Shown here: positions 42,321 through 61,680 of the stretch, piece after piece
How positions within the stretch are numbered: position 1 is the first letter of the stretch
Layout of the letters: every line of letters begins with the position of its first letter
From: Guillardia theta CCMP2712
Lineage: Eukaryota > Protista > Cryptophyta
Direction: 5' to 3'
NCBI RefSeq assembly: GCF_000315625.1
Contig: NW_005434482.1
Location: forward strand, 22,338 to 86,337
Length of the DNA stretch: 64,000 bases
The notes under the pieces: model-generated
What the model saw: only the letters and a program-made list of their open reading frames with translations
What the model was told of the DNA's origin: nothing
Databases searched by the model: none
Position numbers and translations under genes: made by a program

Positions 42321-43243
42321 GCCCGTTTCAAAGATTCCGAGTTTCACCTTTTTCAGCGGATGACATGATTACAAGAGCCGCAAAACTCCTTTTATGACCC
42401 GAATTTATACCATGGCGGGTGGGTCCACAGATGGGGAAGGAGGGGTAGGGGTCATTGGGACCTAGCATCCCATACAGCCTTCGAGACTTCCTGAGATTTG
42501 AGGGGCCATAACCTTTTGTAACAAGGAGGGGTACTACAGAGTGGTCTTTAGGGGGTAGTGGTACTGCCCTGATGACTACGCTACAGAAAGAGTGATACCT
42601 GGAACTCAAGTCGTTTGAGATCTAAAGTATCCTTGCTGACATCCGTACTTCTCGAAATGGGGATCAAACGAACTCAGTACCCCCATTTTGATATTGTTAT
42701 GAAGGGGTTGTCTTGTCGTGTAGTAATTATGTCACATGGAAAGATATCATTCGATTTGAACAATATTAAAGGATCTTGTCAACATTTCAACATAGAACCT
42801 ATGATTTCATTGGATATGTTTCTCCCTCGGATTGGATTGTGTCCCCGTGCAGATCGGAAATACCAAACGTTGTACATTCTGAACCTTTCGAATCTTTGGC
42901 ATCAAACACCCTACCCTATGTCAACATTCTACCCTACCCTCACAAAATCAAACTCCTGATATGATTCTACCCTACCCTTACAGCCAATCAGAGTAATCCG
43001 CGGATCACAATGGGGTAGTGTGGGGGAGTTATTCCCCGTCGATGACTATTTCTGCTCCCTGCGCGCGGCTGAAGGGATCGAGCAACAAGACTTGGTTCTT
43101 CCTCTTACGCCATTTAGCAGCCTTCCTGCTTCCTCCTCCTCTCCTTGACCTACAACTCCTCAGTTCATCACAGCTTCTCTGGCAACTCTACCTGTCTACC
43201 TCTGCTAGATTGCTCCTGCTCTCTTCTTTGGGCTGCAAAGACA

Positions 43244-44701
43244 ATGACTGTGGAGGTTCAACGTCATGCCGCCTCCTTCTCGATGGGAAAATCACCGATG
43301 CCGCGTGTACCCAGCATGCCCAGGAACCACTCATGTGAATTCGATCAATCTCCTCCCAATCTTTCTCGTGTACGTCGTGGATCGGCCCCGAACTTGACTA
43401 GCACGTCAACTTCTGGAAGCGTGTCGCCTTTAAGCACAAGCAAATCAGCGATATCGCCCTCTTCTTCGCTCTCGTCTCCTACGCTCTCTTCGGATTCTCA
43501 CAAGTCACTACTCAAGATGGACTCGAGTGGTGAGGAAAGGAGAGGTCGTCGTGCCTCAGTTCACTTTGAGACGGATGCCAATCCTCCTGCCGATCTTCAG
43601 CATCAGACCCCAGAAAAGGCCTGCCGCTTCTCGTTCAACAACGAGCGTGAGAAATGGTGCAAGTCATCCTGCAAGGTTCACTTCAATGAAACTCCACTGT
43701 CAACTACTCAAAAGAGCGCCACCTACAAGATGGTAGATGCCTTGACCGGCGAAGAGAAGATCTGCACTCTTTTTCCTCCAAACACTCCCGAGGAAACTTA
43801 CTTTGATGATGCCATGATCCAGCATCTTGCTCAAGAGTATGCCTTGTTGTTCAACGAGATTTCAGAGTATCCCGTCAAGTTTGTGCCCAAGGACGTGTAC
43901 AAGCTGTCTGAAAGGCAAAACTTTCTGGTGAGCGTCCACCCCAAGCTCTGTGGCGAGTTTGCGCCCAACGAGGAGATGGTGCTGACAGAGGCGGAGCAAG
44001 ACATCATGGAAGCCTTCTCGCACTTCAGCTGGGAGGCGTCCCACGGCAACCTTGTCATCACCTCAATGAGCGGCTATGGCGGAGTCTACACCAGCGCCAG
44101 GATTCACAGTGTAGAGCAGCAGTGGCTCAAAGATCGAGGCACTGAGGGCATTGTTCGCTTCTTCAAGAAGCACACTTGCAATCAATATTGCAAGATGCAC
44201 AAGTTTCGTCCCTTCAAGATGCCGGAGCAGTTCAAGGAGGCTCCTGCCCCGGTTGTTGCAGAGAGGAAGGCTGAATCCGTCAAGCCGCCCCCCCTTGCTC
44301 CTGAGGAGAAGAGCAAGGCAGAAGCTCCGAGGCACATGAGCAGCTGGATCGAAAAGATGGATCAGCCCCCGCCACTGATCGAGCAGGGGGCTGACAAGAG
44401 CCCCGTCAATACGAGTAGCAGGCCAGTCAAGGTGCCCCTCATTCCCGACAGCCCTGAAACGCACGCGCTCAAGACCGACTCGACCTTGCAGGACCTCAAC
44501 AGCCTCACCAAAGGGATGCGCAACCAGCTAGGGGTGAAACCTCCCAAGATGCAGCAGGAGCAGCCAGGCAGCAAGTCGCCCAAATACTCAGGCCTGCTCG
44601 TGTCTAAGGGAGTACCTGGAGGAGTGTTGAAGATCACCAAAGCGGGGATGAAGAGCATGGACAGGGAGAGGAAGCACAGTCCTCTTCGGAGGCAGATCTA
44701 G
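43244..44701 (+). CDS. Alpha-kinase (eEF2K/MHCK-type) domain protein, probably a pseudokinase; intronless
   Basis: AQEYALLFN, EAFSHFSWEASHGNLVI, RIHS, GTEGIVRFFKKHTCNQYC; first ATG at 43244. Confidence 0.85.
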   Translation: MTVEVQRHAASFSMGKSPMPRVPSMPRNHSCEFDQSPPNLSRVRRGSAPNLTSTSTSGSVSPLSTSKSAISPSSSLSSPTLSSDSHKSLLKMDSSGEERRGRRASVHFETDANPPADLQHQTPEKACRFSFNNEREKWCKSSCKVHFNETPLSTTQKSATYKMVDALTGEEKICTLFPPNTPEETYFDDAMIQHLAQEYALLFNEISEYPVKFVPKDVYKLSERQNFLVSVHPKLCGEFAPNEEMVLTEAEQDIMEAFSHFSWEASHGNLVITSMSGYGGVYTSARIHSVEQQWLKDRGTEGIVRFFKKHTCNQYCKMHKFRPFKMPEQFKEAPAPVVAERKAESVKPPPLAPEEKSKAEAPRHMSSWIEKMDQPPPLIEQGADKSPVNTSSRPVKVPLIPDSPETHALKTDSTLQDLNSLTKGMRNQLGVKPPKMQQEQPGSKSPKYSGLLVSKGVPGGVLKITKAGMKSMDRERKHSPLRRQI

Positions 44702-44814: not shown

Positions 44815-46233
44815 TTACCCTTCAGCTTCAGTGAATTTGTTGGTCCTGTCAGGGACGAACTGGAGTTGGTTGGAGACCATGGCCGTGAAGGCTTGAAGGA
44901 GGACAGAAGAGAGGCAGGGCTGCTCTGGCTCTTGCCGTTCAAGAAAGGGCAGGCAGTGTGCGATGCTCTCGAGGGTGGAGAGGTAGTTGTGCTTGGGTTC
45001 CTTGCGAAAGATATACTTGCCTGTTAACCCTCCAGCAAACTGTAAAATGAAAGATGTCAAAAATTTCTGACTCACTTCATATATCGCCCTCGCTCTCCAT
45101 TTCCCTCACTCGTCTTGCATTCCTCCTCTTTTCTCCATTCCCACTCTCCTGGCTCCAAATTTTTTTTGCTGCTACTTTCGTTGCTACTACACCATCTTCA
45201 CAAGCCCACAGCTCACCTGTACTCTCCTAAATCCGTGAAGGAAGGAGCAGCTTCGGTACATCGATTTAGCCTGCGCCCAAGTCCCATCGATGACAACAAG
45301 GTGCTTGACATGCCTAAGAACATCCTCCTCGTCTGCATTAGCCTGAGACTCTTTCAGCCCCAAGTTGATCGCCCCCTTGTCTCTCAGCTCTGGATGTTTC
45401 AGCAGGAAGATATCGTCTTCCTCCAAATCCGGGAACAGAACGACAGTGTTTTTGGTGTTCAGATCGTAGCTGAGCTTGAGCTGGGCCTCGAAGTTCAGAG
45501 CGATGGCATGATACACAAGCTTCTCTCGCGCTAGGCTCAGGCTTCTGGAGCCTCCTCCATGCGGCATCGTGAAGTTTCCCTGCAGAACGTGGACGTTCTT
45601 CAAGCAGAGCTGCACGATGGGAACAGTGCCGTAGGTTTTCTTCTTCCTCTCCTTTGGGTGCTGCAAGATCATAATCTTCAACTTTGACTCAATCGGCTCC
45701 TCTGGCAACGACGAACATATGCAGACTCGAGCGGGTCGCAGGCAGCGGTGGCAGAGACGCGCATCTGCTCCTCGACACCTCACGGTCAACGGTTGCTTGA
45801 CCTGGTTCAAGTTGACGTCCAGGGACATGGTGGTGCCTGAGGCAAGAGCGTGAGCTTCAGGAGCCTGCATCTCTCTCTCACCAAGATCGGGCTGAAAGCA
45901 GACCATGGGGCCTCGCACGCCCCCCAGGCGCCTCGAGCTACATGGCAGCTTGCAGGCTGCCAGTCTTTCATGCTCGTGCACAGTGCAGCGGTGGAGGAAA
46001 GCGAGGGAGTTCGCCTCATAGTATGTTGCAAGTGAGGTACGAAGAACAATTGCGAGGAAGAGAAATGAGAAAAGAAGCCGAAAGGAGAAAGAGCAAGACA
46101 GGAAACGTCTGGACATGACACGAGACCAAACCAAGAAACAGAATTCACATTCGTGGTTGACCGTTCCTGGAACCTTGAAACCAAAAAATCTTCCATCAAC
46201 AACCATGAAACCATGAAAATCGATGGTACGCAT
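44815..46233 (-). CDS. DTW-domain tRNA-uridine aminocarboxypropyltransferase (DTWD2/TapT-like); start uncertain
   Basis: CHRCLRPARVCIC, ILQHPKE, LVVIDGTWAQAKSMY; last exon YIFRKEPKHNYLSTLESIA. Confidence 0.9.
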
Positions 46234-48790: not shown

Positions 48791-49401
48791 CGGGGAATCC
48801 GATCGTGGGGGGTCGCATCTCCTTTTTTTTAACCGTACCCCTCCTGTTGGTCAATTAACCAGGCAATCATGGTCTACCACCCCACACTCTGATGGGCAAT
48901 AAGTAGGTCATATGCAAAGACACGAAGTGGGGGTGGGGTAACCATTTGTTCCAATGGACATTGGCGTACGCTCTGGTACTGAAGTTTATGATTTGAACGA
49001 CAGATGCTTGGGACAGGCTTGCTCCTCAAAACTTGCCATACTACACTAAAACTATCGACGAAATATCAAATTCTGACTCACTATTTGGAATTTGAAGAGG
49101 AAATCTATCAAGGCTTCCGGATATCAGGAGATACATGAGATAAACGAAACGGTGGGGTGGGGTCAACAAACTCCAAAGGGAAACGGAGGCCGAGAATGGG
49201 TGGGGGTGGTGAGGGTACCCTCCTTTGATAGGACTATCAACCGGTGGGATGGCAACGAGTACACCCAATGCGGCTCGTTTTAAAAGGATGGGTCTGGTAG
49301 GGGTGGTTGAAAGGGTCTTGTGGTAAAGAGGAAAGGGGGTGGGTACGCAAGGAAGCAGCAAGTTTGCATGATACGAGACGGCGAAGTCGGATCGTAGTAA
49401 C

Positions 49402-52400
49402 ATGTCAAGACTAGACAAGTTGGTGAAAGACAAGCTGGATAAACTAGACAAGAAGAAGTTCTCGCAAACAGAGTTCGAACAGGCATGCAATGCTGGTCAG
49501 CTGCTGATTGTCATCGAGGACAGAGTTTTCGATGTCGAAGGGTTCCGACACAAACATCCTGGCGGAATTTCTTCCTTGGAGAGATATTACGCCCGGGACG
49601 CAACCGAAGTTTTTTTCCGTGTGCATGGACCAAATGCACACCGTAGCTTGGAAGAACTGTACATCGGGGACCTGGTTCCTTCGATACAGATCTCTTGCAA
49701 CGTAAACGCGAAGCTGGATGATGTTGAATCAAAGTTGGCCAAGCAACACGATAGTCATCAGCATGAATTTGATCCTCAGTCGAGTAAGTGTCCGTTTGCT
49801 ACACTTACTGGAACCCTCAAGGACCCTCCGCATCCAGGCATGTTCCACCAGCATCCAGCCCACGAGCACTTGGATTCAGGTGGGAAGGAGAACGAGGCAA
49901 GATGTCCCTTTCAGCACACGCTCAAGACGCCGGATGAGTCTCTCCCTGAGAATCCTCCAGTAGATAGCAGTCACTCCAAAGATAATCGAGAGAACGAGGT
50001 AGCCAGCATAGTCAAAGCGTCAGGTTTCGATTTCGCATATCCCGAAAAGGACAAGGCATTTGATGGACACTGGCATTCTGATCGCAACAAGCATGAGCCA
50101 CATTTCAGCACCTTAGAGGCTCTAGTGGAAGAGATTGACAATGAGAATGTGTCTAATGGCGACAACAAGACTGAATCTGATACTCCAACCTCTTCAAACA
50201 GTGATGGCGTGAATGAGCAGAGCTCACGGCCTAGTAAACCTGTCGGCGATGATGCTCCTCTTGATGGTTTTACGAGGGTGAAGTCCGGAGGAACTTTCTC
50301 TAGGTCAAGTTCATCCGGATCATTTTCGAAGAAGATCGTTGAAAACGTTCTCAGACGAACTGGGTCTGGATCTAGTCTTCGATCCTGGAAGGAGAACCTC
50401 AAAGGCGATGTTCATGCGGAGTTAAGCGAAGGAGGATGCCCCTTCAAGGCCTTAACCTCTCTTCCGACTGAGTTTGCTGCGGCTCGAGGTCGGAGGAGAA
50501 GCTCTGTTACTAAGCAAGACTTTTCTACGCGTAGAGGATCTGGAGTGTTTCCTGGAGGCAACGATTTCTTCTCCGGTCCAGGCAAAGCTCTCGAGTCTCC
50601 TCGCTCCATCCGATCTCGTGATAACGCCTCTGTCGCGTCTCGTCAGGTCTCAGTATACGCGCAGTCAAAGCGATCAGGCCACGGCACTAACTTGAGGTCG
50701 AGCGGCGGCGTCTTTCGAGGAGCAAGGACTCGCAGGAAGGCAATGACGCACAAAAAGTCCTCTGCTCCTCCGATCAATCGCGCGGAGTGGGATTTCCATG
50801 CTGCGAGACTGGAGTCGTCTTGGAAGAAGCTTTTGAAGGTCGTGTCGTATGCAGATCTAGGAGGAGCAATCTACGAATCTGTTCGCGACAATGATATTCT
50901 AGAACCTCTCTTTCGTTTTACGAACAGGTCTGCTCAAGGCACCAAGTTCGTTGACATGTTGTCAAGCATTGTTGAGAACTTGAACTCACCTGCAAATGTC
51001 TACCAGAAGATTGCTGACCTCGCGCCTCTGCATCACCGCAAAGGCGTAGAAATCAGTCACATGCCAATGATGCAGATGATTGTGTTGGGCGTCTTCAGGC
51101 ACGCGCTGGGAGATGATTTCAGTCAGGAGGAGATGCAGTCATGGCTGTGGATGTGGGAGTACCTCACTACTGCTCTCGATGTCTCCTTGAAGGTCATCTG
51201 TTCTACTATGGGCGTTGTAAGAGACTCTTGGGAGACCATCTTGGAGTCCTACACGCCTGGTCAGCTGGGGGAGATGATCTACGACTGCCTTTTCAAGCTT
51301 GCTCCTAACGCCACTCACCTCTTCACCAAGCCCCGCGAGTATATGGCCATCAAAATGGGCGATACGCTTGGAATGCTAGTTTCTTTTGCTGATGATCCAG
51401 ACGACATGAAGAAACAAGTGGCATCGCTGGGTCTGCGGCATGTCAAGTATAACGTTCGTCCTCATCACATTCCTCTTATCGCCCCCGTGATTGTCAACGT
51501 GCTTGCTGAGGCTTGCGGTGAAGCCTGGAGCGAAGAAATCGAGCAAGCCTGGTCCACAGTGATTCACATGGTCTGTCAGAACATGGTGGAAGCAATTCAA
51601 GATGGTGAAAACTTCGCGACCAATTTGGAATATAGTAGCCAACAATTTCAAGAGGTTGGAATGAAGGACAAGCTGAAGGACGCTCTTTATGAGAAACTCA
51701 GGAATTACTCCCCTGAAATATTCGAAGTGCAAGCTCAGTCAGATCCCAGAAAGCTGTACAATGAAATCTCGATGTCCCAGCTGCAAGCGGAAAACACAAA
51801 AATCGCCTCAAATCACAAGGTGGACTTGTTGTTATCGTTAAGTAGTAATAACATTGCAGAGTTTTATGCAAGAATATGCCTCATTCAAGTCCGGACTCAC
51901 AAAGAAATCTTCAAAGAAAGACGTCTCAAACGAAAAGAGCAACAAGGAGATGTCGAAGCTTAACAAGGGCACGAAGGCTTATGACGCTTTTGAAGTGTCT
52001 TTGTACTTTTACCTCCTCGTTTCTTGATATCCTATCCAGGGCCTGATCGACTTGATCGTGGAATTCAATCTTGAGATCCTGAAGCTTGTTTGGGAGCCCG
52101 AGAGACAAGTCGAGGTTGTTTACATCTACGCGCCCAAATTTTATGCCATGTAAACGTCAAGCGAGTATTTCTACCTTGTTTGACATCTCATGTAGGGGAA
52201 TCAGGAACAAGCATCTCAAGAACATTGCTAGATCATTGCAAGAAGCGATGGTTGTCGTTCTCGACGACAGGTTTGGGACCAAACTGCCTGCAAACTCTCT
52301 AAACAAGACTCGCAGGGCTGTTGAGAACTTCGATGATTGTCTACAATGGCTATGGAGGTTGATCCTTGATGTGAGCACAAGACGTTACGGTATTGTTTGT

Positions 52401-55400
52401 GATCGTTTCCGCGTTACAACAGGCTTTCACAAAAGAGCTTGCTATCATTGAAGAAGCTAAGTATGAACTGATTCTCGATTCATACGAACAAATCAGATCT
52501 CAATGCGAAGATGAAGTCTGCCTGAGCAATGCCCGATTGCGAAATCTTACATCTCGTGCAGCAATTAGGCAAGATATTCTGGAAGCATCTGAATGACTTG
52601 GTAAGAAAACTTTTTTACGATTGATTCAAATGCTCTTGTACCTGAAGTTCAAATACAGTCGCCCGAGCAAACTCATCTATTCAGAAGATCTCTCAAAATG
52701 TTCGTACGATCTCTCTTGCCTTTTTTTCATTCTTTTTGCTCAGGTGGGGAAGGCTGCTGCAGCATATCATGCGCATGTTGGTCATGAGCACTCAGGACGC
52801 TGAGGTAGGCTTTAGGTTGTCCCTCATCGCCCAGTGACGTTGCCAACGACAGAAATTCTTTCAAGTGCTTTTCGACCTGACTGTGAATCACATTCGCTAT
52901 GGAGTCAAATCAGAATATCTCAGCCCATTCGGACAAGCGCTCATTCTCACTCTCGAAGAGGTGTGCACTTGTACCTTCACTCGATGGGTTGACAGGATTC
53001 TCAGATCTTGAAGCCTTCATGGTCGACAGACATTGAGAACATGTGGAAAGAGGTTTGCTACTTCTTTCCTTTCTCTCGCTTTTCTTTTCCCCTTTCTTTG
53101 CCTTTCTACCTCAAATTCTTCTTAATTCTTTGTGCAACCTAATCTGTTCCCTCCAACTGCAGCTCTGGCGAAGGGCAGCGAACAGCATGACCCGGGGGCT
53201 GAACATGGGTGGAAATGGCATCACCCATGCGCTAGTAGAAGGAGATGTTGGCATGTTGGAGCAAGCGATCAGTTGCGCTCCTCGAAACTCACGTGCTCAA
53301 TGGCTTTGCGAGGTATTGTAGAGAGAGGGAGCAAGGGGGGAAGAGAAGCAGAGAGGAGTTGGTGCGGTCAGGATGTGATGAGATGAAGGTAATGGTTAAC
53401 GGAGCCTCGATCTCTCCGCTTTACTGGGCCTTGAGGGATGGCAAGTACGCTCTCGTAGAGTTTATCCTCAGGTGTGTGACTCTTTTAGAGCGAGGACGTC
53501 TGACGCCGTGACAGTGACCTGCTGACTATCCGGGCGGACATACACGGTTACTACTACGGGAGAGAAGTGACGGCAGTTGAAATGTCGCCACTAATTTGAC
53601 GGGAGCTGCAGGAGCTATTCAAGTTCCATGAGGACATTGTCGGAGCACTCGGTCGTCAGAGTGTTGGTCTCATACCGATACTGCTAGACGGGTTGCTGTG
53701 GCACGCAAAAGAGAAGGAAGACGGAAGGCTGGTCGGCCAATCCCTCACGTCATCCGCTTCTTCTGATTTCTTGTCCCTCTTCCTTCTCAATGCTCTCTCA
53801 GTGTGTCTTCTGAACTGTCATGTAGGTAAGAGTCAACTATTACATCAAAGACCTCTATGGCGATCCTGGCATCATCGAAGACCCTTGGAAGTCTCCACTG
53901 GCTTGGCTCATCAAGTTGGGTGAGAGAACTTTGATTGCTTGTCGTTGCCGTCATGCCATTGCTAGATGACAACGAGTCGTTCAAGCATCCAGCTGTCTGC
54001 AAGACCCTCGACCTGAAGTGGACGAAGTTTGCGCTCAGAGTTTTCCTGCTGAAGGAATCGTGTTTCCTCCTCATGCTTGTCGTGTTTATGATTCGACATT
54101 CTGTTGATCCCAGTGGCTGCGACTCGGCCCTTGAGGTGAGAGGCTTTCACGCAATGAAGTTGTTTGACAATCACCAAACCAGTGGTTGAGAGTACTCCTG
54201 CTGCTCTTGACGCTTGTTAGCCTTGGGCTGCAGGTGACCAAAAGACCAGCCTGTCAAACTCTAGTGTCTGACTTGATCACTGATAAGGCTTGGATCATTT
54301 TCTTTCAAACCAAGAAGAAAATCTTTCTCCCCTTGAAACTTTGGATCTTTCGTTTGCAAATGCCTCGGTTAGATGTTCAAATTAATTCAATGATTCTGAC
54401 ATCTTTGCAAAGATGTTTTAGCAGCATTTGGAACTGGATCAAAATTGTGGCCTGCATCTTGATCATATCCTCATTTGCTAACCAGGTCTTGATATCTTCG
54501 CGTGTGTATCAACTTATTGACTGTCAACTGATGAATTGTTGTTGCAGACATGCTTGGATGGGTTTGAAGGTGTGACTGTTTGCGTTTTCTTCAAAGTGAT
54601 CTGATTTCTTCATTGCAGATAACAACAGTGTGAAAACTGCAGAAGCTTTCGCAGCCATCTTGCTGTGGGCCGAAATGTTTCAGGCACTGACATATGAAAG
54701 ATGCTTGTATTCAATCTTTGATCATGATTCAGATCAGCATGTTGTCAACTCCGATGGCGGCGTTTGCTTACACATTGGGAATCATGGTTCGGGATCTCAG
54801 TCATTCACTGTATATGATCATCATCCTTATTTTTGGTGAGTAGGAGGCGATTCGCTTCCATGCCTGCCTGTCACATCTCTATCTCACCCACGTCATCTGT
54901 GTCTTCTTTCTCGGTTCTGTCTGCGTTAGCTTTCTGCTGCCTACCGTCCCGGCTTTGCCGTTTCTATCCTACTTGTTTTTGGTCTCTGATATCATGAACA
55001 CATTCTCTTGTTATTGTTGATTTCAATCTTTCTCTGATGCTGCTTGCAAGGGTTTGGATCTGCTCTGTCCATTATCGGGGACCCTCCCTTTGACGAGGGA
55101 TGGGACACTACTGCCGTTATACTGTTGCAAGAGGTAAACCTCAAGCCAAAGCCATTCCTTCCTAGGCTGAGACTATGAAACAGGTGATGGGTGTAGCTCA
55201 GCCCATGTATCCTCAAATCTCAAGCTTGACTCGTTTTCTTCTCCTCGTCTTCGTCACGTAAGTCTACTCCTGCTTTACCTGATTCCTCTTCACATACTCT
55301 TTTCGACCTTGACTATTTCGTTTACTTTTTCTCACTCTCCCGCTTTCTTCTTCTCCCTTCTTCATCTTTTCATAAACCTGCTTTGTCTCTTGCCATTTCC

Positions 55401-56142
55401 CTTGTGCTCTGCCCCCCCTCATGTCGTTTTCAGGTGTGTTACGATTGGACTCCTCAACGTCCTGATCGCGCAGCTTACCATCACCTACGATCGGCTCAAC
55501 GTGGACAAGGAAGGCTTTGCAATGATGCACAGGTGAGGGTCAACGAGACGAGCAGGAGGAAGAAAGTCAAACAAGCAGGAAGCAGATGAGGGAGAGGAGG
55601 ATCAAAGCCAACAATTCAAAGACAACCAGAGGAAGGGAGAGAAATCGAGACTGACTGCTTGCCAGGGCAAGTACGTGCTTGGAAATCGAGACCTACCTTC
55701 CACTGACATGGAGGAGGTGAGAGAGGGAGGAAATCGCCTGGCGTATGATGGCATGTAGGCGTCTCTTCAACAACATGGGGTTTGACCGCCCCCTTTCCTT
55801 CGCGGAAGGAGATGAGGGTCCATGTGGGGGCGTGCAGGTGAGAACAAGTCCAGAGGCAGGAGAGGCGAGGGGGGGAGGGAGGTTGTGGTAAGAGAGGGGG
55901 GGGAGGGAGGTTGTGGTAAGAGAGGGGGAGGAGGGAGGTTGTGGTAAGAGAGGGGGAGGAGGGGCAGGACAGGAGGATGAAGGGTGGGCTTGATGGTGTC
56001 GCAGGTTCTTGAGCGAGATGACTGTCCTCGCTATGTCGCTGATCGCATCTTACGCTTCACCGGGGACGCGAGCCCTGAAGACCCCTGGCCCTCCATCAAC
56101 TTTGATGAGCCTCCTGTTGCCCATAATGCAGAGGAGCAGTGA
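49402..56142 (+). CDS. Cytochrome b5 + 4x globin + ankyrin-like + TRP-like ion channel fusion protein (~28 introns)
   Basis: b5 motif VFDVEGFRHKHPGG...DATEVFFRVH; globin F-helix motifs LAPLHHRKGV, LGLRHVKYNV, YAPKFYAMGI, LTVNHIRYGV; ANK-like SPLYWALRDGKYALVEFIL; pre-S1 FKHPAVCKTLDLKWTKFA; S6 IGLLNVLIAQLTITY; reading frame can be kept by GT(GC)-AG splicing to TGA 56140-56142. Confidence 0.82.
55870..55960. repeat. Intronic ~29-bp tandem repeat x3
   Basis: gagggaggttgtggtaagagaggggg repeated. Confidence 0.85.
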
Positions 56143-56409: not shown

Positions 56410-57122
56410 TTATCGTGAAACTTGCATGTGAAACTTGAGCACCTGACTCCTCACGATGGATCGCAAGGCAAAGAAGCCGACGATGACCTCGAGGAAGACG
56501 AAGACCGTCAGGATGATGCTGCCTGCCAAGTCGAAGGAGAGCTGAAGAGGAAGTCCGCTCACTCGAACGGGAAGCGAGAGGACGAAGAAGAAGGCGATGG
56601 GCAGCTGCGGGATGAGCGTGAGGAGCCAAAAGCCAGTGAGCTGAGGGACTTTCTCCTGGAGGTTACCAACGAAGCCTAGAGGAGCACAGGGATCACTCGC
56701 TCGCATGCAGCAGGTGGAGATGCTACCCAGGTAGAGGCGGACGGGCTCCAGGAGGAACCAGACGGAGAGGACAAGAGGGGAGAGAACTTTGTACGCCTGA
56801 TTCACAATCAAGTAATTTTCCTGCGCCGCACAGTGAGGGAGGGTCATGAGACAACCGATACATCACCTTGAAGAGCATGAGGGCGAGGGTGAGGGCGCCC
56901 CAGAAAATTGAGTAGAAGACGTTGAAGTAAAGAAGCATCTGAAGCGGCAGGCTAGAAGCAATCTGCGTGTCTACAACCTGGTCATTTTAATCATGTGAAT
57001 AATGTGTGCATACTTGTTATCATCAGCTCTTCGTCATTTCCTAGCTCCTCCTGCTGCTCTTGCGACAAATGGACTTGTGCAAACAGACGTCCAGACAAGG
57101 ATGTCAATCCTCGTGCAATCAT
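56410..57122 (-). CDS. TMEM17: TMEM17-like ciliary transition-zone membrane protein (4 exons)
   Basis: IASSLPLQMLLYFNVFY, LEPVRLYLG|FVGNLQEKVPQLTGFWLLTLIPQLP, GFFALRSIVRSQVLKFH. Confidence 0.85.
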
Positions 57123-58401: not shown

Positions 58402-61400
58402 ATGGTAGCGGAGCAGCAACCGCTCGCGTCCTTCTTCTGCCCCATCAGCATGGTACTGATGACCGACCCTGTCTCCTGCTGCGATGGCAACACTTATGAA
58501 AGATCCTCCATCGAGACCTGGCTCCAGCTCCATCCTTCCAGCCCTCTCACTGGCGCCTGCCTCCCTTCCAAGCAACTTGTTCCCAACTTCGCTCTCCGCA
58601 GCGCAATCCAAGAGTGGAAGGAGCAACACGCGTTTTTCGTCCCCAGACACGAAGTCGAGATTGACCAGCAGCCTATCTCAGAAGGCTCATCCAAGACTCT
58701 CTACATAGGTTACCTCCGCATGCGAGGGCGAGGAGCGATGCCAGAGAAGATCAAGGTCGCGGTGCTCAAGCTGAGGCAAGGCGACGGCGAGAGAGAAGCC
58801 GGGGTGATGCTGAGTCTCGGGCCGCATCCTCGGCTTGTACGGTACATGGGGCAGAGCGAGGACGCCGAGGGCTGCCGCCTGCTGCTGACCGAGTACGCCG
58901 AGCTGGGATCGTTGAGGCGGGCTTTACTGGGGAGGCTGGCGGGCCAGGTGACGGGAGGGCACCAGATGGCGATGATGCATCAGATCGCACAGGGCATGGA
59001 GCACCTTGCTGAGCAGCGGGTTGTGCACCGGGACCTCGCGGCAAGGCACGTGCTGGTCTTGGGCTTCGATAAAGACGACTTGCGGAGGACGTCGGTGAAG
59101 GTGGCGGGCTTCGGGCGTGCAATAGACCTCGCGGACGGTACTGACGCTACGGTAGCGGGGCGGGGGCTGCCGGTGCGCTACATGCCCCCGGAGTCCATGA
59201 AGAAAGGTCGGTGCTCGGAGAAGAGCGACGTGTGGGCCTTCGGGGTGACGTGCTGGGAGATCCTGACCTTGGGCAAGACCCCCTACTCCAACATGACGGA
59301 CGATACTGTGATCAGGTACGTGTGCGGGGGAGGGAGGCTGCCCCGAGAGGACATAGAGGGAGGATGTCCAGACGAGGTATGGGCTCTAATAGAGAGCTGC
59401 TGGTCGACGAGTGAAGAGGATCGCCCGACGTTCGCGGAGCTTGCGGTAGCTTTAGGAAGAGCCGGAGCGGAGGGGCCTGAGAGGACAGCATGGAGGTGGT
59501 CAGGCAAGACGCCTGGGCTGCAGGACGCATGGAGTAGCAGCCAGTCACTATGCCGAAGAATATGCAGTGTAGCAGAAGCTGCGTGGAGACGCATCGGGGA
59601 GGCAGCGGGCGGAGGGATTGATGTGGTTGCGACGAGAGTAAGAAAGCGCAAGTACCGAGAGCTTGCGGGACAAGAGTCAGCATGTGATGCTTTGGAAGGC
59701 ATGACGAGTGCTGCCCGTGACCCGCTGAGCACAAGAGCTAAGAGGCTACGGGTCGGGGCGCCGTCAACGGTTGAGGGCCAAGACGCACGCGGGATGCAGC
59801 AGCTGGCAAGGGAGGCATGGAGGCAGCTGAGGACGGGAGCTGAAGACAGCATAGAGGCGGTAGTGCAGGAGATAAGGACGTACGAGGTACTCGCGGAGGT
59901 ACAGCAGGCTGCATGCGAAGCCTTGGTCAGCATGGCTCAGAGCGTTGAAGACTACAAGCACAAGGCGAGAGAGGCGGGAGCGATCGAGGCTGTCGTCAGC
60001 GCCATGTCCAGGCACCCACAAGATGCGCAGGTACAACAGGCAGCGTGCGAGGCCCTGAGGCATACAGTGTGTCGCGCCGAAGTTAGCCAGGAGTGCGCGA
60101 GAGAGGCGGGAGCGATCGAGGCTGTCGTCAGCGCCATGTCCAGGCACGCGGACGATGTACGGGTACAGCAGGCAGCATGCGAGGCCCTGGAGGACATAGT
60201 CTCGTTCATCGATGGGAACAAGGTGCGCGCGCGAGAGGCGGGAGCGATCGAGGCTGTCGTCAGCGCCATGTCCAGGCACCCAGAGGACGCGGGGGTACAG
60301 CAGGCTGCGTGCCAGGCCCTGGAGGACATAGTCTTGTTCATCGATGGGAACAAGGTGCGCGCGCGAGAGGCGGGAGCGATCGAGGCTGTCGTCAGCGCCA
60401 TGTCCAGGCACCCACAAGATGCGCAGGTACAACAGGCAGCGTGCGAGGCCCTGAGGCATACAGTGTGTCGCGCCGAAGTTAGCCAGGAGTGCGCGAGAGA
60501 GGCGGGAGCGATCGAGGCTGTCGTCAGCGCCATGTCCAGGCACGCGGACGATGTACGGGTACAGCAGGCAGCATGCGAGGCCCTGGAGGACATAGTCTCG
60601 TTCATCGATGGGAACAAGGTGCGCGCGCGAGAGGCGGGAGCGATCGAGGCTGTCGTCAGCGCCATGTCCAGGCACCCAGAGGACGCGGGGGTACAGCAGG
60701 CTGCGTGCCAGGCCCTGGAGGACATAGTCTTGTTCATCGATGAGAACCAGGTGCGCGTGCGAGAGGCGGGAGCGATCGAGGCTGTCGTCAGCGCCATGTC
60801 CAGGCACGCGGACGATGTACGGGTACAGCAGGCAGCATGCAAGGCCCTGTCCTGCGTGTTGAGTTTCATGAATGAGAGCCAGGTGCGCGCGCGAGAGGCG
60901 GGAGCGATCGAGGCTGTCATTAGAGTCCTCGATATCCACGCAGACAATGTGCGGGTGCAGTTTGAATGGTTCTGGACCCTCAAATACACCATGCAATACT
61001 TCCGATATCAGGGCACAGCGAGGGATGCAGCAGCAATCGACGCTATAGTCAGCGCCATGACCAGGCACCAGACCCGCACGAAGGTACAGGAAGGGTTCTG
61101 CAAGGTGCTAAATGAAATAACCAAAGACAACAAACAGAACAGACTCCCGGTCACCCAGGCGGGAGCGATCGAGGCCGTCGTCAGCGCGATGACCAGGAAC
61201 ACAGACCACGACGTACAGCAGGCAGCATGTGACGCGCTGCACAGCATGGTCAACGGCATGGCAGACAGCCAGGTGCGCGCACGAGAGGCGGGAGCGATCG
61301 AGGCCGTCGTCAGCGCAATGACCAGGAACACAGACAATCGGTGGGTACAGCAGGTAGCATGTGACGCGCTGCACAGCATGGTCAACGGCATGGCAGACAG

Positions 61401-61680
61401 CCAGGTGCGCGCACGAGAGGCGGGAGCGATCGAGGCCGTCGTCAGCGCAATGACCGGGAACACAGACCACGACGTACAGCAGGCAGCATGTGACGCGCTG
61501 CACAGCATGGTCAACGGCATGGCAGACAGCCAGGTGCGCGCACGAGAGGCGGGAGCGATCGAGGCCGTCGTCAGCGCGATGAATAGGAATGGGCGTGGCT
61601 CTGAGGCGAGCCGACGGCTGAGGTCTGTGCTTGAGCGACAAGATTCCGACACGGCGATGGTAGGGGAGAAGAGAAGCTGA
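58402..61680 (+). CDS. U-box + tyrosine-kinase-like (pseudo)kinase + armadillo-repeat protein, intronless
   Basis: FFCPISMVLMTDPV..DGNTYERSSIETW..SPLT..LVPNFALRSAIQEW; VHRDLAARH, LPVRYMPPE, KSDVWAFGV; ~13 ARM repeats of AGAIEAVVSAM...VQQAACxAL. Confidence 0.92.
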   Translation: MVAEQQPLASFFCPISMVLMTDPVSCCDGNTYERSSIETWLQLHPSSPLTGACLPSKQLVPNFALRSAIQEWKEQHAFFVPRHEVEIDQQPISEGSSKTLYIGYLRMRGRGAMPEKIKVAVLKLRQGDGEREAGVMLSLGPHPRLVRYMGQSEDAEGCRLLLTEYAELGSLRRALLGRLAGQVTGGHQMAMMHQIAQGMEHLAEQRVVHRDLAARHVLVLGFDKDDLRRTSVKVAGFGRAIDLADGTDATVAGRGLPVRYMPPESMKKGRCSEKSDVWAFGVTCWEILTLGKTPYSNMTDDTVIRYVCGGGRLPREDIEGGCPDEVWALIESCWSTSEEDRPTFAELAVALGRAGAEGPERTAWRWSGKTPGLQDAWSSSQSLCRRICSVAEAAWRRIGEAAGGGIDVVATRVRKRKYRELAGQESACDALEGMTSAARDPLSTRAKRLRVGAPSTVEGQDARGMQQLAREAWRQLRTGAEDSIEAVVQEIRTYEVLAEVQQAACEALVSMAQSVEDYKHKAREAGAIEAVVSAMSRHPQDAQVQQAACEALRHTVCRAEVSQECAREAGAIEAVVSAMSRHADDVRVQQAACEALEDIVSFIDGNKVRAREAGAIEAVVSAMSRHPEDAGVQQAACQALEDIVLFIDGNKVRAREAGAIEAVVSAMSRHPQDAQVQQAACEALRHTVCRAEVSQECAREAGAIEAVVSAMSRHADDVRVQQAACEALEDIVSFIDGNKVRAREAGAIEAVVSAMSRHPEDAGVQQAACQALEDIVLFIDENQVRVREAGAIEAVVSAMSRHADDVRVQQAACKALSCVLSFMNESQVRAREAGAIEAVIRVLDIHADNVRVQFEWFWTLKYTMQYFRYQGTARDAAAIDAIVSAMTRHQTRTKVQEGFCKVLNEITKDNKQNRLPVTQAGAIEAVVSAMTRNTDHDVQQAACDALHSMVNGMADSQVRAREAGAIEAVVSAMTRNTDNRWVQQVACDALHSMVNGMADSQVRAREAGAIEAVVSAMTGNTDHDVQQAACDALHSMVNGMADSQVRAREAGAIEAVVSAMNRNGRGSEASRRLRSVLERQDSDTAMVGEKRS
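59965..61580 (+). repeat. Coding tandem repeat: 132-bp units (396-bp higher-order), then 129/132-bp units
   Basis: gcgggagcgatcgaggc(t/c)gtcgtcagcgc recurs; unit starts at 59965, 60097, 60229, 60361, 60493, 60625, 60757, 60889. Confidence 0.95.

What the first reader, a model, noticed from the sequence alone, without database searches (positions are those of the whole stretch)
49402..56142. Candidate globin-coupled TRP-like ion channel: cyt b5 - 4 globins - ankyrin - 6TM pore in one gene
Seen: the ORF track stops at 51963, but a GT-AG intron at 51820-51859 and ~27 further short introns continue one frame. That frame runs through two more globin folds (the fourth: LILDSYEQI..QLGKIFWKHLNDLSPEQTHLF..LTVNHIRYGVKSEYLSPFGQALILTLEEIL..W..W), ankyrin-like helices (GITHALVEGD, SPLYWALRDGKYALVEFIL) and a pre-S1 motif (FKHPAVCKTLDLKWTKFA). 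Six hydrophobic segments follow, with a pore region TTAVILLQEVMGV and S6 IGLLNVLIAQLTITYDRL. Established: ANK + 'HP..L..KW' + 'LLNxLIA' is the TRPV/TRPA-type layout, and characterised globin-coupled sensors feed chemotaxis, cyclase, phosphodiesterase or kinase outputs. I know of no characterised ion channel carrying its own globins, although uncharacterised database homologues in other algae may exist. Inference: an O2/NO/CO- or redox-gated cation channel, possibly driving aerotaxis or flagellar responses.
Basis: partly seen in the sequence, partly recalled or inferred. Interest (0 to 1): 0.93.

Follow-up and report, generated by a model that had tools for sequence, protein, structure and literature searches.

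The report
Globin-carrying TRPV-like ion channel gene
One 29-exon gene of a cryptophyte alga joins a cytochrome b5, three haem-type globins and one degenerate globin to a TRPV-like cation channel; this looks like a built-in oxygen, nitric oxide or redox sensor wired to an ion pore, belongs to a large algal family, and I found no paper describing it.

Summary
Spliced RNA contigs from three studies run as one molecule from 49366 to beyond 56283 with 28 short introns. They give one 1589-codon frame (49402-56142).

Domain order:
- cytochrome b5
- a 360-residue linker with three CPF motifs
- globins G1 and G2
- a degenerate half-globin, G3, with Phe in place of the proximal His
- globin G4
- about two ankyrin-like helix pairs
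- a TRPV-type linker, six transmembrane helices (S1-S6), TRP helix and C-terminal strand

A close paralogue models with high confidence. It matches only TRPV channels in the PDB, by profile (E 2e-18) and by fold (Z 18.4).

The fusion is not a one-off. This genome has 8 such loci. 67 of 73 sampled relatives carry a globin in front of the channel, in cryptophytes and dinoflagellates. An intron-poor relative encodes globins and channel in one open frame.

A 2014 paper listed two paralogues as 'chimeric globins' and does not mention a channel. Seven literature searches found no description of a globin-channel fusion.

Gating by O2, NO, CO or redox is inferred, not shown. The scan had already noted the globin and b5/CPF details on this same stretch.

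The parts
49402..56142 (+). Whole coding region: 29 exons, 28 introns, 1589 codons plus stop. Exons: 49402-51819, 51860-51994, 52040-52149, 52196-52270, 52316-52370, 52423-52515, 52562-52600, 52659-52699, 52744-52804, 52853-52960, 53005-53052, 53163-53312, 53389-53471, 53515-53566, 53612-53731, 53826-53919, 53966-54135, 54183-54233, 54288-54367, 54413-54485, 54548-54569, 54619-54683, 54733-54835, 55051-55133, 55184-55257, 55434-55532, 55666-55716, 55759-55837, 56005-56142.
   Evidence: Spliced RNA contigs; exon model; collinear homologues; conserved splice sites in L001; dN/dS 0.117.
49465..49674 (+). Cytochrome b5 domain (aa 22-91), with HPGG at 49555-49566.
   Evidence: Pfam Cyt-b5, E 1.1e-14, 54.6 bits against a cut-off of 23.7.
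49687..50766 (+). Ser/Gly/Lys/Arg-rich linker (aa 96-455) with three Cys-Pro-Phe motifs at 49789-49797, 49903-49911 and 50437-50445. The third motif (GCPFxAL) is conserved in all relatives that carry a b5.
   Evidence: Motif scan; dN/dS 0.23.
50779..51237 (+). Globin G1 (aa 460-612): Tyr491 at B10, Gln512 at E7, His544 at F8.
   Evidence: Pfam Globin; AF2 model matches myoglobin and cytoglobin, Z about 17.3-17.5, rmsd 1.9-2.0; alignment to HGbI and HGbRL; residue positions.
51238..51648 (+). Globin G2 (aa 613-749): Tyr627 at B10, Met648 at E7, His680 at F8.
   Evidence: Pfam Globin; PDB sequence hit to Hell's Gate globin I, E 8.5e-14; fold Z 18.2, rmsd 1.6 over 130 residues.
51983..52452 (+). 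Degenerate globin G3 (aa 848-941, exons 2-6). Only helices E-H are recognisable. Phe885 sits at the proximal-His position.
   Evidence: No Pfam hit; hhalign to G1 gives 98.9% probability, E 3e-17, 92 columns; internal repeat G1G2 ~ G3G4 by BLAST.
52459..53204 (+). Globin G4 (aa 944-1075, exons 6-12), His1022 at F8. In the model its last helix runs straight into the first helix of the channel's cytosolic domain.
   Evidence: Pfam Globin, 26.6 bits against a cut-off of 22, on the equivalent stretch of P0003; hhalign to G2, E 9.5e-32; F8 His invariant in 22 relatives; helix continuity.
53205..53988 (+). Ankyrin-like helix pairs plus a TRPV-type linker domain with a beta-hairpin (aa 1076-1235).
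   Evidence: AF2 model, pLDDT above 90 here. VIA alignment spans model 1-531 = TRPV3 197-739; placing this N-terminal part on TRPV3's last ankyrin repeats and linker uses TRPV3 domain limits from memory. No Pfam Ank hit. Lowest dN/dS, 0.028.
53989..55503 (+). Pre-S1 helix and S1-S6 (aa 1236-1491): S1 54031-54102, S2 54124-54314, S3 54426-54482, S4 54633-54744, S5 54796-55076, pore helix and filter 55101-55210, S6 55223-55503 with LLNVLIAQL.
   Evidence: Mapped from the AF2 model of P0003; profile hit to TRPV3 and TRPV1, E 2e-18; Ion_trans in 22 of 46 and PKD_channel in 15 of 46 relatives; tetramer prediction 0.43 against control 0.00.
55507..55696 (+). TRP helix (aa 1493-1511, KEGFAMMHRASTCLEIETY). 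Ala occupies the place of the TRP-box Trp.
   Evidence: HMMER alignment to TRPV1; AF2 helix 474-492; family alignment.
55775..56139 (+). Conserved C-terminal region (aa 1524-1589) with the GDxGPxGG(I/V)Q and RFTGDASPxDPWP motifs. It includes the strand that, by analogy with TRPV, should pair with the linker beta-sheet.
   Evidence: Invariant columns in 46 relatives; strands 512-514 and 524-529 in the model.
54684..54732 (+). Intron 22, the only GC-AG intron. The other 27 are GT-AG, 40-215 nt long.
   Evidence: Homology across the junction; L001 has GT at the same donor position.

Best explanation
This is one expressed gene for a 1589-residue subunit of a tetrameric TRPV-like cation channel. 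In place of most of a TRPV ankyrin domain, its cytosolic N-terminus carries a haem module.

Shown here:
- the single transcript;
- the domain order;
- conserved proximal histidines in G1, G2 and G4;
- purifying selection on every domain;
- a TRPV-type fold;
- a large family with the same fusion.

Inferred:
- The three canonical globins bind haem.
- Binding of O2, NO or CO, or a change in iron redox state, moves the globin helices. G4's last helix continues into the ankyrin-like and linker domain, which in TRPV channels couples cytosolic signals to the S6 gate through the TRP helix. Ligand state would therefore set the channel's open probability and be turned directly into a cation or Ca2+ current.
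- The cytochrome b5, present only in the cryptophyte members, would re-reduce ferric globin haem.

My odds: real fusion gene 0.97; pore-forming TRP-type channel 0.8; haem ligand or redox state gates it about 0.5.
For: Single spliced transcript:
- Three contigs from three studies share 28 identical joints and match the window exactly.
- The 4770-nt frame has no stop.
- The model aligns end to end with full-length proteins P0003, P0008 and P0011.
- In the orthologous locus L001 every donor and acceptor is kept, and dN/dS is 0.03-0.31 in every domain.

Haem module:
- Cyt-b5 scores 1e-14 and Globin 2e-19 in Pfam.
- G1 and G2 model as full 3/3 globins, Z 17-18, rmsd 1.6-2.0.
- G4 passes the Pfam cut-off.
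- The F8 His is invariant in G2 and G4 and nearly invariant in G1 across 22 relatives.

Channel:
- The AF2 model has pLDDT 87 and pTM 0.83.
- The Foldseek top 50 are all TRPV, best E 4e-12.
- VIA gives Z 18.4 to TRPV3 over 427 residues.
- The family profile scores E 2e-18 against TRPV3 and TRPV1, and the top 60 PDB hits are all TRPV.
- The S6 motif LLNxLIAQL is conserved across the family.
- A four-copy prediction of S4 to the TRP helix scores 0.43, best of three controls 0.00, at least 59% of contacts shared between runs, partner pLDDT at least 57. In the tool's calibration the mark was reached by 21 of 30 proteins solved as pairs of one chain and 0 of 23 solved as single chains.

The fusion is the rule:
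- 67 of 73 N-terminal regions of relatives carry a Globin domain.
- This genome has 8 loci with the same layout.
- Relative P0216 encodes globins and channel in one 1256-codon open frame.
Against: - No haem binding, ligand response or current has been measured.
- The globins are Mb/FHb-like (Pfam PF00042, nearest to HGbI), not the sensor-globin lineage of classical globin-coupled sensors. The Tyr-B10/Gln-E7 pocket of G1 is also typical of NO-dioxygenase-type globins.
- The filter region is variable, and here it lacks the acidic residue of TRPV1 (GVAQ against GMGD), so selectivity is unknown.
- The TRP-box Trp is absent.
- Structure models were made on paralogue P0003 (52% identical overall, higher in the channel), not on the window's own protein.
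- The tetramer pass may reflect the predictor's memory of solved TRPV structures.
- Transcriptome-derived relatives truncated by retained introns (P0002, P0005, P0006) leave room for short soluble isoforms.
Confidence: 0.55

Rival explanations
1. The channel is real, but the b5-globin array is a tethered enzyme rather than the gate sensor. It would act as an NO dioxygenase, nitrite reductase or peroxidase. Such a module would protect the channel, or shape local NO and reactive oxygen around it, with b5 feeding electrons for turnover.
For: G1 has Tyr at B10 and Gln at E7. By my own knowledge this pair is typical of flavohaemoglobin-type NO dioxygenases and of HGbI, which is the best PDB sequence match (E 8.5e-14). 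A fused cytochrome b5 is what a catalytic cycle would need.
Against: Only 5 of 73 sampled relatives carry b5, so the electron donor is optional while the globin-channel link is nearly universal. The strongest conservation and lowest dN/dS lie at the junction between globins and channel, which suggests mechanical coupling. An enzyme would not need to be fused in this fixed order in hundreds of clusters.
Confidence: 0.2
2. It is a channel regulated by haem or iron. The globins are partly empty, and the CPF (haem-regulatory-like) motifs bind labile haem reversibly, so the channel reports haem supply rather than gases.
For: There are three CPF motifs in the linker. One of them (GCPFxAL) is kept in all b5-bearing relatives. 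One globin, G3, has already lost its proximal His.
Against: The CPF motifs are absent from the dinoflagellate members checked. The proximal His and pocket residues of G1, G2 and G4 are conserved as in stable haem proteins.
Confidence: 0.1
3. The membrane module does not conduct ions. It serves as a tetrameric membrane anchor or scaffold that concentrates globins on a membrane, for example to store or hand over O2 or to detoxify NO at an organelle.
For: The filter sequence varies across the family, and the TRP-box Trp is missing.
Against: The S6 motif LLNxLIAQL, the pore helix and the S4-S5 linker are conserved, with dN/dS 0.069. The whole TRPV coupling apparatus is kept. A simple anchor would not need any of this.
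Confidence: 0.1
4. It is an artefact: two neighbouring genes (a b5-globin gene ending near 51963 and a separate channel gene) joined by assembly or by my exon model.
For: The ORF caller stops at 51963. Databases hold 854-residue versions (P0001, P0002). The tool warns that a contig across two genes does not prove a single transcript.
Against: Contigs from three studies splice intron 1 and run on in one frame for 1589 codons. P0001 is an ORF call on unspliced metagenome DNA, and P0002 reads into intron 2. Homologues are collinear over the whole length. An intron-poor relative has globins and channel in one open frame. Eight loci in this genome have the same order.
Confidence: 0.02

Closest known systems
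TRPV channels (TRPV1-6, OSM-9, Nanchung/Inactive)
   Same: Both have pre-S1, S1-S6, a pore helix, the S6 LLNxLIA motif with Asn and Ile at the TRPV1 positions, a TRP helix, a linker beta-hairpin and a C-terminal strand. The profile scores E 2e-18 and the fold Z 18.4.
   Different: There is no six-repeat ankyrin domain, only about two ankyrin-like helix pairs. A b5/globin array sits in front instead. The TRP-box Trp is Ala. The filter lacks the TRPV1 or TRPV5/6 acidic residue. The family occurs in cryptophytes and dinoflagellates, not animals.
Globin-coupled sensors (HemAT, EcDosC, AfGcHK, Leishmania HemAC, and the membrane-bound GsGCS of Geobacter; PMC8076648)
   Same: An N-terminal haem globin is joined in one chain to a C-terminal output domain. 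GsGCS also has a membrane domain as its output.
   Different: The globins here are Mb/FHb-type (PF00042), not sensor globins of the protoglobin lineage. There are four in tandem rather than one. The output is a six-helix pore-loop ion channel, which to my knowledge, and in the seven searches run here, is not among the described outputs.
'Chimeric' haemoglobins of Guillardia theta, EKX33177.1 and EKX39126.1 (Smith, Vinogradov and Hoogewijs 2014, PMC4101818)
   Same: They are paralogues of this gene (P0004 and P0013), described with an N-terminal cytochrome b5 and three globin domains.
   Different: The paper does not mention a channel or a C-terminal domain (0 occurrences) and counts only two such proteins. 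Here there are 8 loci. The 1060-residue model ends by reading into an intron, which would explain the paper's 'D3 lacks the H helix'.
TRP channels with a fused sensor or enzyme domain (TRPM2 with NUDT9-H, TRPM6/7 with alpha-kinase), and haem- or gas-modulated channels (BK/Slo1, Kv1.4, KATP; O2 sensing by TRPA1). These examples are from my own knowledge.
   Same: A channel's gating is tied to a cytosolic sensing module, or to haem, O2, NO or CO.
   Different: In those cases haem binds short motifs or acts through separate proteins, and TRPA1 senses O2 through Cys and Pro chemistry. None carries its own globin fold.

Membership tests
TRP superfamily, TRPV-like (group 1) | Six transmembrane helices with a re-entrant pore helix between S5 and S6 | tested here: met
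   AF2 model of paralogue P0003:900-1470, pLDDT 87, mapped onto the window protein with a gap only in the S3-S4 loop. Foldseek top 50 are all TRPV. VIA Z 18.4.
TRP superfamily, TRPV-like (group 1) | Sequence homology to TRPV over pre-S1 to the TRP helix | tested here: met
   The family profile against PDB sequences gives TRPV3 and TRPV1 at E 2.3e-18, profile positions 176-475 = TRPV3 425-715. The top 60 are all TRPV. The single sequence scores E 1e-3.
TRP superfamily, TRPV-like (group 1) | S6 motif LLNxLIA (Asn of the pi-bulge, Ile of the lower gate) | tested here: met
   The window has IGLLNVLIAQL at aa 1473-1483. The motif is conserved in 46 relatives.
TRP superfamily, TRPV-like (group 1) | TRP box (IWKLQR-type, with a conserved Trp) in the helix after S6 | tested here: not met
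   The helix is present, but Trp is replaced by Ala: FAMMHRA against IWKLQRA. The family consensus is GxAxxxRA.
TRP superfamily, TRPV-like (group 1) | N-terminal ankyrin repeat domain (six repeats in TRPV) | tested here: not met
   No Pfam Ank hit in P0003:900-1100 at E up to 10. One of 46 relatives has a weak Ank_2 hit. The model shows about two ankyrin-like helix pairs. From the overall VIA range (model 1-531 = TRPV3 197-739) and TRPV3 domain limits from memory, these should overlie TRPV3's last repeats.
TRP superfamily, TRPV-like (group 1) | Linker-domain beta-hairpin joined by a C-terminal strand | tested here: met
   Strands 125-132 and 136-141, and 524-529, in the model. VIA alignments run to TRPV3 residues 739-752.
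TRP superfamily, TRPV-like (group 1) | Homotetramer with a central cation pore | tested here: inconclusive
   Four copies of P0003 1232-1400 scored 0.43, best of three controls 0.00, at least 59% of contacts shared between runs, partner pLDDT at least 57. In the calibration the mark was reached by 21 of 30 proteins solved as pairs of one chain and 0 of 23 solved as single chains. The contacts are S5 with the neighbour's S4, and S6 with the pore helix. The pass may come from memory of TRPV structures. Conduction cannot be tested with these tools.
Globin-coupled sensors (strict sense) | Sensor globin of the S (protoglobin-related) lineage | tested here: not met
   Pfam assigns PF00042 Globin. 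Protoglobin PF11563 appears once among 73, at E 0.00098. The nearest PDB sequences are HGbI, HGbRL and neuroglobin.
Globin-coupled sensors (strict sense) | Globin at the N-terminus and an output domain at the C-terminus of one chain | tested here: met
   Domain order shown by the transcript and homologues.
Globin-coupled sensors (strict sense) | Haem bound through the proximal His; output changes with ligand or redox state | not testable with these tools
   The F8 His is present in G1 (H544), G2 (H680) and G4 (H1022), and absent in G3 (F885). Binding and signalling need experiments.
3/3 globin fold | Full A-H helical fold for each of the four units | tested here: inconclusive
   G1 and G2 meet it: Z 17-18 over 130-140 residues. 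G4 meets it by Pfam (26.6 bits) and hhalign (E 9.5e-32 to G2). For G3 only helices E-H align (hhalign E 3e-17). Its N-terminal half was not resolved, and its fold was not searched alone.
Cytochrome b5 | Cyt-b5 fold with the HPGG motif and two axial His | tested here: met
   Pfam, 54.6 bits against a cut-off of 23.7, aa 22-91. HPGG at aa 52-55. A second His in FFRVHG is read directly from the sequence.

The most novel reading that the evidence does not exclude
This would be the first ion channel gated directly by its own haem globins. It would be a one-polypeptide transducer turning O2, NO, CO or redox state into an electrical or Ca2+ signal. It has expanded to 8 genes in this alga and is common in cryptophytes and dinoflagellates, where it could underlie oxygen or NO taxis, day-night redox signalling, or responses to hypoxia in blooms and in coral symbiosis. 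It might also serve as a gas-gated actuator for cell engineering.
Probability: 0.45. Interest if true: 0.92.

Novelty: new variant of a known kind. Interest (0 to 1): 0.82.

Why it matters
Known haem-based gas sensors act through enzymes, chemotaxis proteins or transcription factors. Known gas-sensitive channels borrow haem through short motifs or partner proteins.

A globin array built into a TRPV-like channel would be a direct route from gas or redox state to membrane current. It is immediately testable by expression and patch clamp.

The family is large: 417 clusters at E 1e-30 or better. It occurs in ecologically important algae, including coral symbionts and bloom-forming dinoflagellates.

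The result also corrects the globin census of this alga. Eight multi-globin channel genes exist, against the two 'chimeric globins' reported. It also shows that a TRPV-type channel lineage exists far outside animals.

Tried and rejected
- **GT-only splicing.** An exhaustive search with GT-AG introns only gave 25 solutions. The best needed a 19-nt micro-exon and gave a frame (TCLDGFEGVTVCLSQPSCYACIQ...) that homologues do not share. I rejected it for a GC-AG intron 22, which restores LLWAEMFQ|ISMLSTPMAAF. This matches P0003 and P0008, and L001 has GT at that donor. A first unconstrained search timed out.
- **The window's own protein.** I looked for its full-length form in the protein collections and did not find it. 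The nearest entry is an ORF-only call on a metagenome contig (P0001, 93% identical). Folds and searches therefore used paralogue P0003 and alignments.
- **Raw RNA reads.** Run X15 gave only 6 reads, all at the 3' end. That is too few to show transcript ends or strand.
- **G3 and the ankyrin part.** Pfam found nothing in either. G3 was rescued by a profile-profile comparison.
- **Literature.** Seven searches found no description of a globin-channel fusion. Only open-access papers and preprints are covered.
- **Two-gene artefact.** Considered and rejected; see the rival explanations.


Full report

Three runs from three different studies hold spliced contigs of 4036, 4947 and 3365 nt. These lie on the window without a single differing letter and share 28 identical joints. 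The 15 joints printed are all GT..AG and skip 40-110 nt.

The longest contig starts at window 49366, 36 nt upstream of the ATG at 49402 and just after an in-frame stop at 49369. It ends past the stop codon at 56140-56142. The runs are only guessed to be RNA. However, contigs that precisely lack 28 GT-AG intervals can only come from spliced RNA. A separate 168-nt contig of low depth covers part of intron 25, which fits traces of unspliced RNA or DNA.

**2. Exon model**

Thirteen joints were not printed. I fixed them from several constraints:
- the exact number of exon letters between anchored pieces (780 nt between 54183 and 55837);
- the number of joints;
- the exonic share of each 199-nt depth bin;
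- an open frame.

GT-only solutions required a 19-nt micro-exon and produced sequence that no homologue shares. A GC-AG intron at 54684-54732 gives LLWAEMFQ|ISMLSTPMAAF, which matches homologues residue for residue.

The final model has 29 exons and a 4770-nt coding sequence (1589 codons plus stop), which equals the length implied by the contig.

Independent support comes from L001, a 7.9-kb metagenome contig that carries the ortholog (93% identical protein in exon 1):
- All 28 donors and the 27 acceptors it reaches are conserved.
- Its donor of intron 22 is GT.
- The projected frame has no stop.
- dN/dS is 0.117 overall and at most 0.31 in every domain.

**3. What the protein is made of**

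Pfam finds Cyt-b5 (aa 22-91, E 1e-14; HPGG at aa 52-55) and Globin (two stretches, E 2e-19) in exon 1. Because a spliced protein cannot be passed to the tools by reference, I used P0003 as a stand-in. P0003 is a complete 1470-aa transcript-derived paralogue. It is collinear with aa 344-1589 of my model at 52% identity, and much higher in the channel.

*G1 and G2.* An AlphaFold model of the globin region (22-sequence alignment, pLDDT 82) shows two complete 3/3 globins. G2 reaches Z 18.2 to Hell's Gate globin I (rmsd 1.6 over 130 residues) and Z 18.0 to neuroglobin. G1 reaches Z 17.5 to cytoglobin and 17.3 to myoglobin (rmsd 1.9-2.0).

*G4.* It passes the Pfam cut-off (26.6 bits against 22). It matches G2 by profile comparison (E 9.5e-32).

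*G3.* It has no Pfam hit. Its four helices align to helices E-H of G1 (98.9% probability, E 3e-17). G3-G4 is an old duplicate of G1-G2. Its proximal-His position holds Phe885.

*Conservation of the proximal His.* It is invariant in G2 and G4 and nearly invariant in G1 across 22 relatives.

*Pocket residues.* By alignment to HGbI, G1 has Tyr491 and Gln512 and G2 has Tyr627 and Met648. These correspond to the B10 and E7 positions; the HGbI residue identities are from my own memory.

*Linker.* The 360-residue linker between b5 and G1 is Ser/Gly/Lys/Arg-rich and holds three CPF motifs. One of them (GCPFxAL) is conserved in every b5-bearing relative.

**4. The channel**

The model of P0003:900-1470 (46-sequence alignment) has pLDDT 87 and pTM 0.83.
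- The 50 best Foldseek matches are all TRPV1, 3, 4 or 6, best E 4.3e-12.
- The second-look aligner gives Z 18.4 to human TRPV3: 427 residues, rmsd 5.9, model 1-531 = chain 197-739. TRPV5/6, Nanchung-Inactive and TRPA1 score Z 16.5-17.8.
- By sequence alone, P0003 hits almost only TRPV chains at E about 1e-3.
- The family profile raises this to E 2.3e-18, covering pre-S1 to the TRP helix, and the top 60 hits are all TRPV.
- Among the 46 relatives, 22 hit Pfam Ion_trans and 15 hit PKD_channel at E up to 0.01.

Mapped to the window, the elements are:
- S1: aa 1250-1273
- S2: aa 1281-1310
- S3: aa 1333-1351
- S4: aa 1365-1385
- S5: aa 1403-1424
- pore helix and filter: aa 1433-1452
- S6: aa 1457-1491, with LLNVLIAQL
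- TRP helix: aa 1493-1511

Differences from TRPV:
- The TRP-box Trp is Ala across the whole family.
- The filter is variable, and here reads GVAQ where TRPV1 has GMGD.
- The ankyrin part is only about two ankyrin-like helix pairs, which Pfam does not detect.

A four-copy prediction of S4 to the TRP helix scored 0.43. The best of three controls was 0.00, at least 59% of contacts were shared between runs, and partner pLDDT was at least 57. In the tool's calibration the mark was reached by 21 of 30 proteins solved as pairs of one chain and 0 of 23 solved as single chains. Contacts were of the domain-swapped kind. This may reflect the predictor's memory of TRPV structures, so it shows likeness rather than assembly.

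**5. The fusion is a family trait**

The window's genome has 87.1 Mb in 669 contigs. It holds eight loci in which a b5/di-globin open frame of 713-918 codons lies 2-3.5 kb upstream of a channel module on the same strand. Two of these are head to head on one contig.

A profile search of 1.84 billion cluster representatives found 417 clusters at E 1e-30 or better. Of 73 representatives with sequence in front of the channel, 67 carry Pfam Globin and 5 carry Cyt-b5.

Named members come from two groups:
- Cryptophytes: Guillardia, Hanusia, Hemiselmis, Chroomonas, Cryptomonas.
- Dinoflagellates: Symbiodinium, Durusdinium, Effrenium, Polarella, Polykrikos, Scrippsiella.

Databases label them only as 'globin domain-containing', 'ion transport domain-containing' or 'hemoglobin-like flavoprotein'.

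One relative on metagenome contigs of up to 284 kb encodes globins and channel in a single uninterrupted 1256-codon frame. A Cyt-b5 frame lies just upstream on the same strand. This shows the fusion without relying on any splicing model.

**6. What is known**

Smith, Vinogradov and Hoogewijs (2014, PMC4101818) reported 13 globin domains in Guillardia theta. Six of them lie in two 'chimeric' proteins with a putative N-terminal cytochrome b5: EKX33177.1 (1060 aa) and EKX39126.1 (1497 aa), which are my P0004 and P0013. The words 'channel' and 'C-terminal' do not occur in the paper.

P0004 ends by reading into the intron after ...LTLEE. That is a likely explanation for the paper's remark that its third domain lacks the H helix.

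Seven full-text searches found no paper on a globin-channel fusion. The closest described case is the membrane-bound globin-coupled sensor of Geobacter (PMC8076648), whose membrane domain is not a pore-loop channel. To my knowledge, the reviewed outputs of globin-coupled sensors are chemotaxis, cyclase, phosphodiesterase, kinase and anti-sigma modules, not channels.

**7. How it most likely works**

*Shown:* the order b5 - linker - G1 - G2 - G3 - G4 - ankyrin-like/linker domain - S1-S6 - TRP helix - C-terminal strand, with purifying selection on all parts. The strongest constraint falls on the ankyrin-like/linker domain (dN/dS 0.028). The most invariant columns lie in that domain and in the C-terminal motifs.

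*Inferred:*
- G1, G2 and G4 bind haem.
- G4's last helix runs into the first helix of the channel's cytosolic domain. Ligand- or redox-linked helix shifts could therefore reach the TRPV-type coupling domain and, through the TRP helix, the S6 gate.
- The b5, found only in cryptophyte members, would keep the globin iron reduced.

*Rivals:* a tethered NO-dioxygenase-type enzyme (0.2), a haem-supply sensor using the CPF motifs (0.1), a non-conducting scaffold (0.1) and a gene-model artefact (0.02).

**8. Verdict**

- there are three canonical globins plus one degenerate one, not four;
- the ankyrin part is ankyrin-like by structure only;
- the TRP-box Trp is absent;
- one intron is GC-AG.

The function remains inferred. 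As far as I could find, the family's channel half has not been noticed in print. I rate it a new variant of known kinds: a TRPV-like channel with a new sensor module, or equally a haem-globin sensor with a new output.

The scan had already noted the haem-pocket differences and the b5/CPF motifs on this same stretch.

Noticed in passing
G000 contigs C78 (205520-210978 -, 215429-221106 +, 308402-314378 +), C178 (53785-59735 -, 78312-84425 -), C189 (58991-65100 -), C29 (252784-257770 -): Seven further paralogous globin-channel loci have the same layout as the window's gene. Two on C78 are head to head, about 4.5 kb apart. Published counts of globins in this alga (13 domains, two chimeric proteins) are therefore too low.
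   Followed up: partly
window 49789-49797, 49903-49911, 50437-50445: Three Cys-Pro-Phe motifs lie in the disordered linker. The third (GCPFxAL) is conserved in all b5-bearing cryptophyte relatives and absent from the dinoflagellate members checked. They resemble haem-regulatory motifs.
   Followed up: partly
L012 and L013, 8233-13771: An intron-poor relative on metagenome contigs of up to 284 kb has globins and channel in one 1256-codon frame. A Cyt-b5 frame lies directly upstream, and a small Ion_trans-hit frame lies nearby on the other strand. The source organism is unknown.
   Followed up: partly
P0004 (EKX33177.1), P0002, P0005, P0006: Several database proteins of this family end by reading into an intron, at positions matching this gene's introns 10, 2, 3 and 15. 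They are truncated models or intron-retaining transcripts, not short natural proteins, although short isoforms are not excluded.
   Followed up: partly
window 56410-56847 (-): A convergent neighbour encodes a TMEM17-family protein (Pfam Transmemb_17, E 1.4e-12). By my own knowledge, this family belongs to the ciliary transition zone in animals. No functional link to the channel was tested.
   Followed up: no
window 43145-44698 (+), 45187-46230 (-), 58402-61677 (+): Other neighbours: an alpha-kinase-domain frame about 5 kb upstream, a DTW-domain frame, and a U-box/protein kinase/armadillo-repeat frame of 1092 codons without introns.
   Followed up: no
window 55870-55960 (inside intron 28): About three tandem copies of a G-rich unit of roughly 26-27 nt (...GGGAGGGAGGTTGTGGTAAGAGAG...) lie in the longest 3' intron. 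L001 ends before this region, so its conservation is unknown.
   Followed up: no
window 54548-54683 (exons 21-22, S3-S4 loop): The extracellular S3-S4 loop is about 40-50 residues shorter here than in paralogues P0003 and P0008. The exon-length sum from the RNA contig rules out a missed exon.
   Followed up: yes
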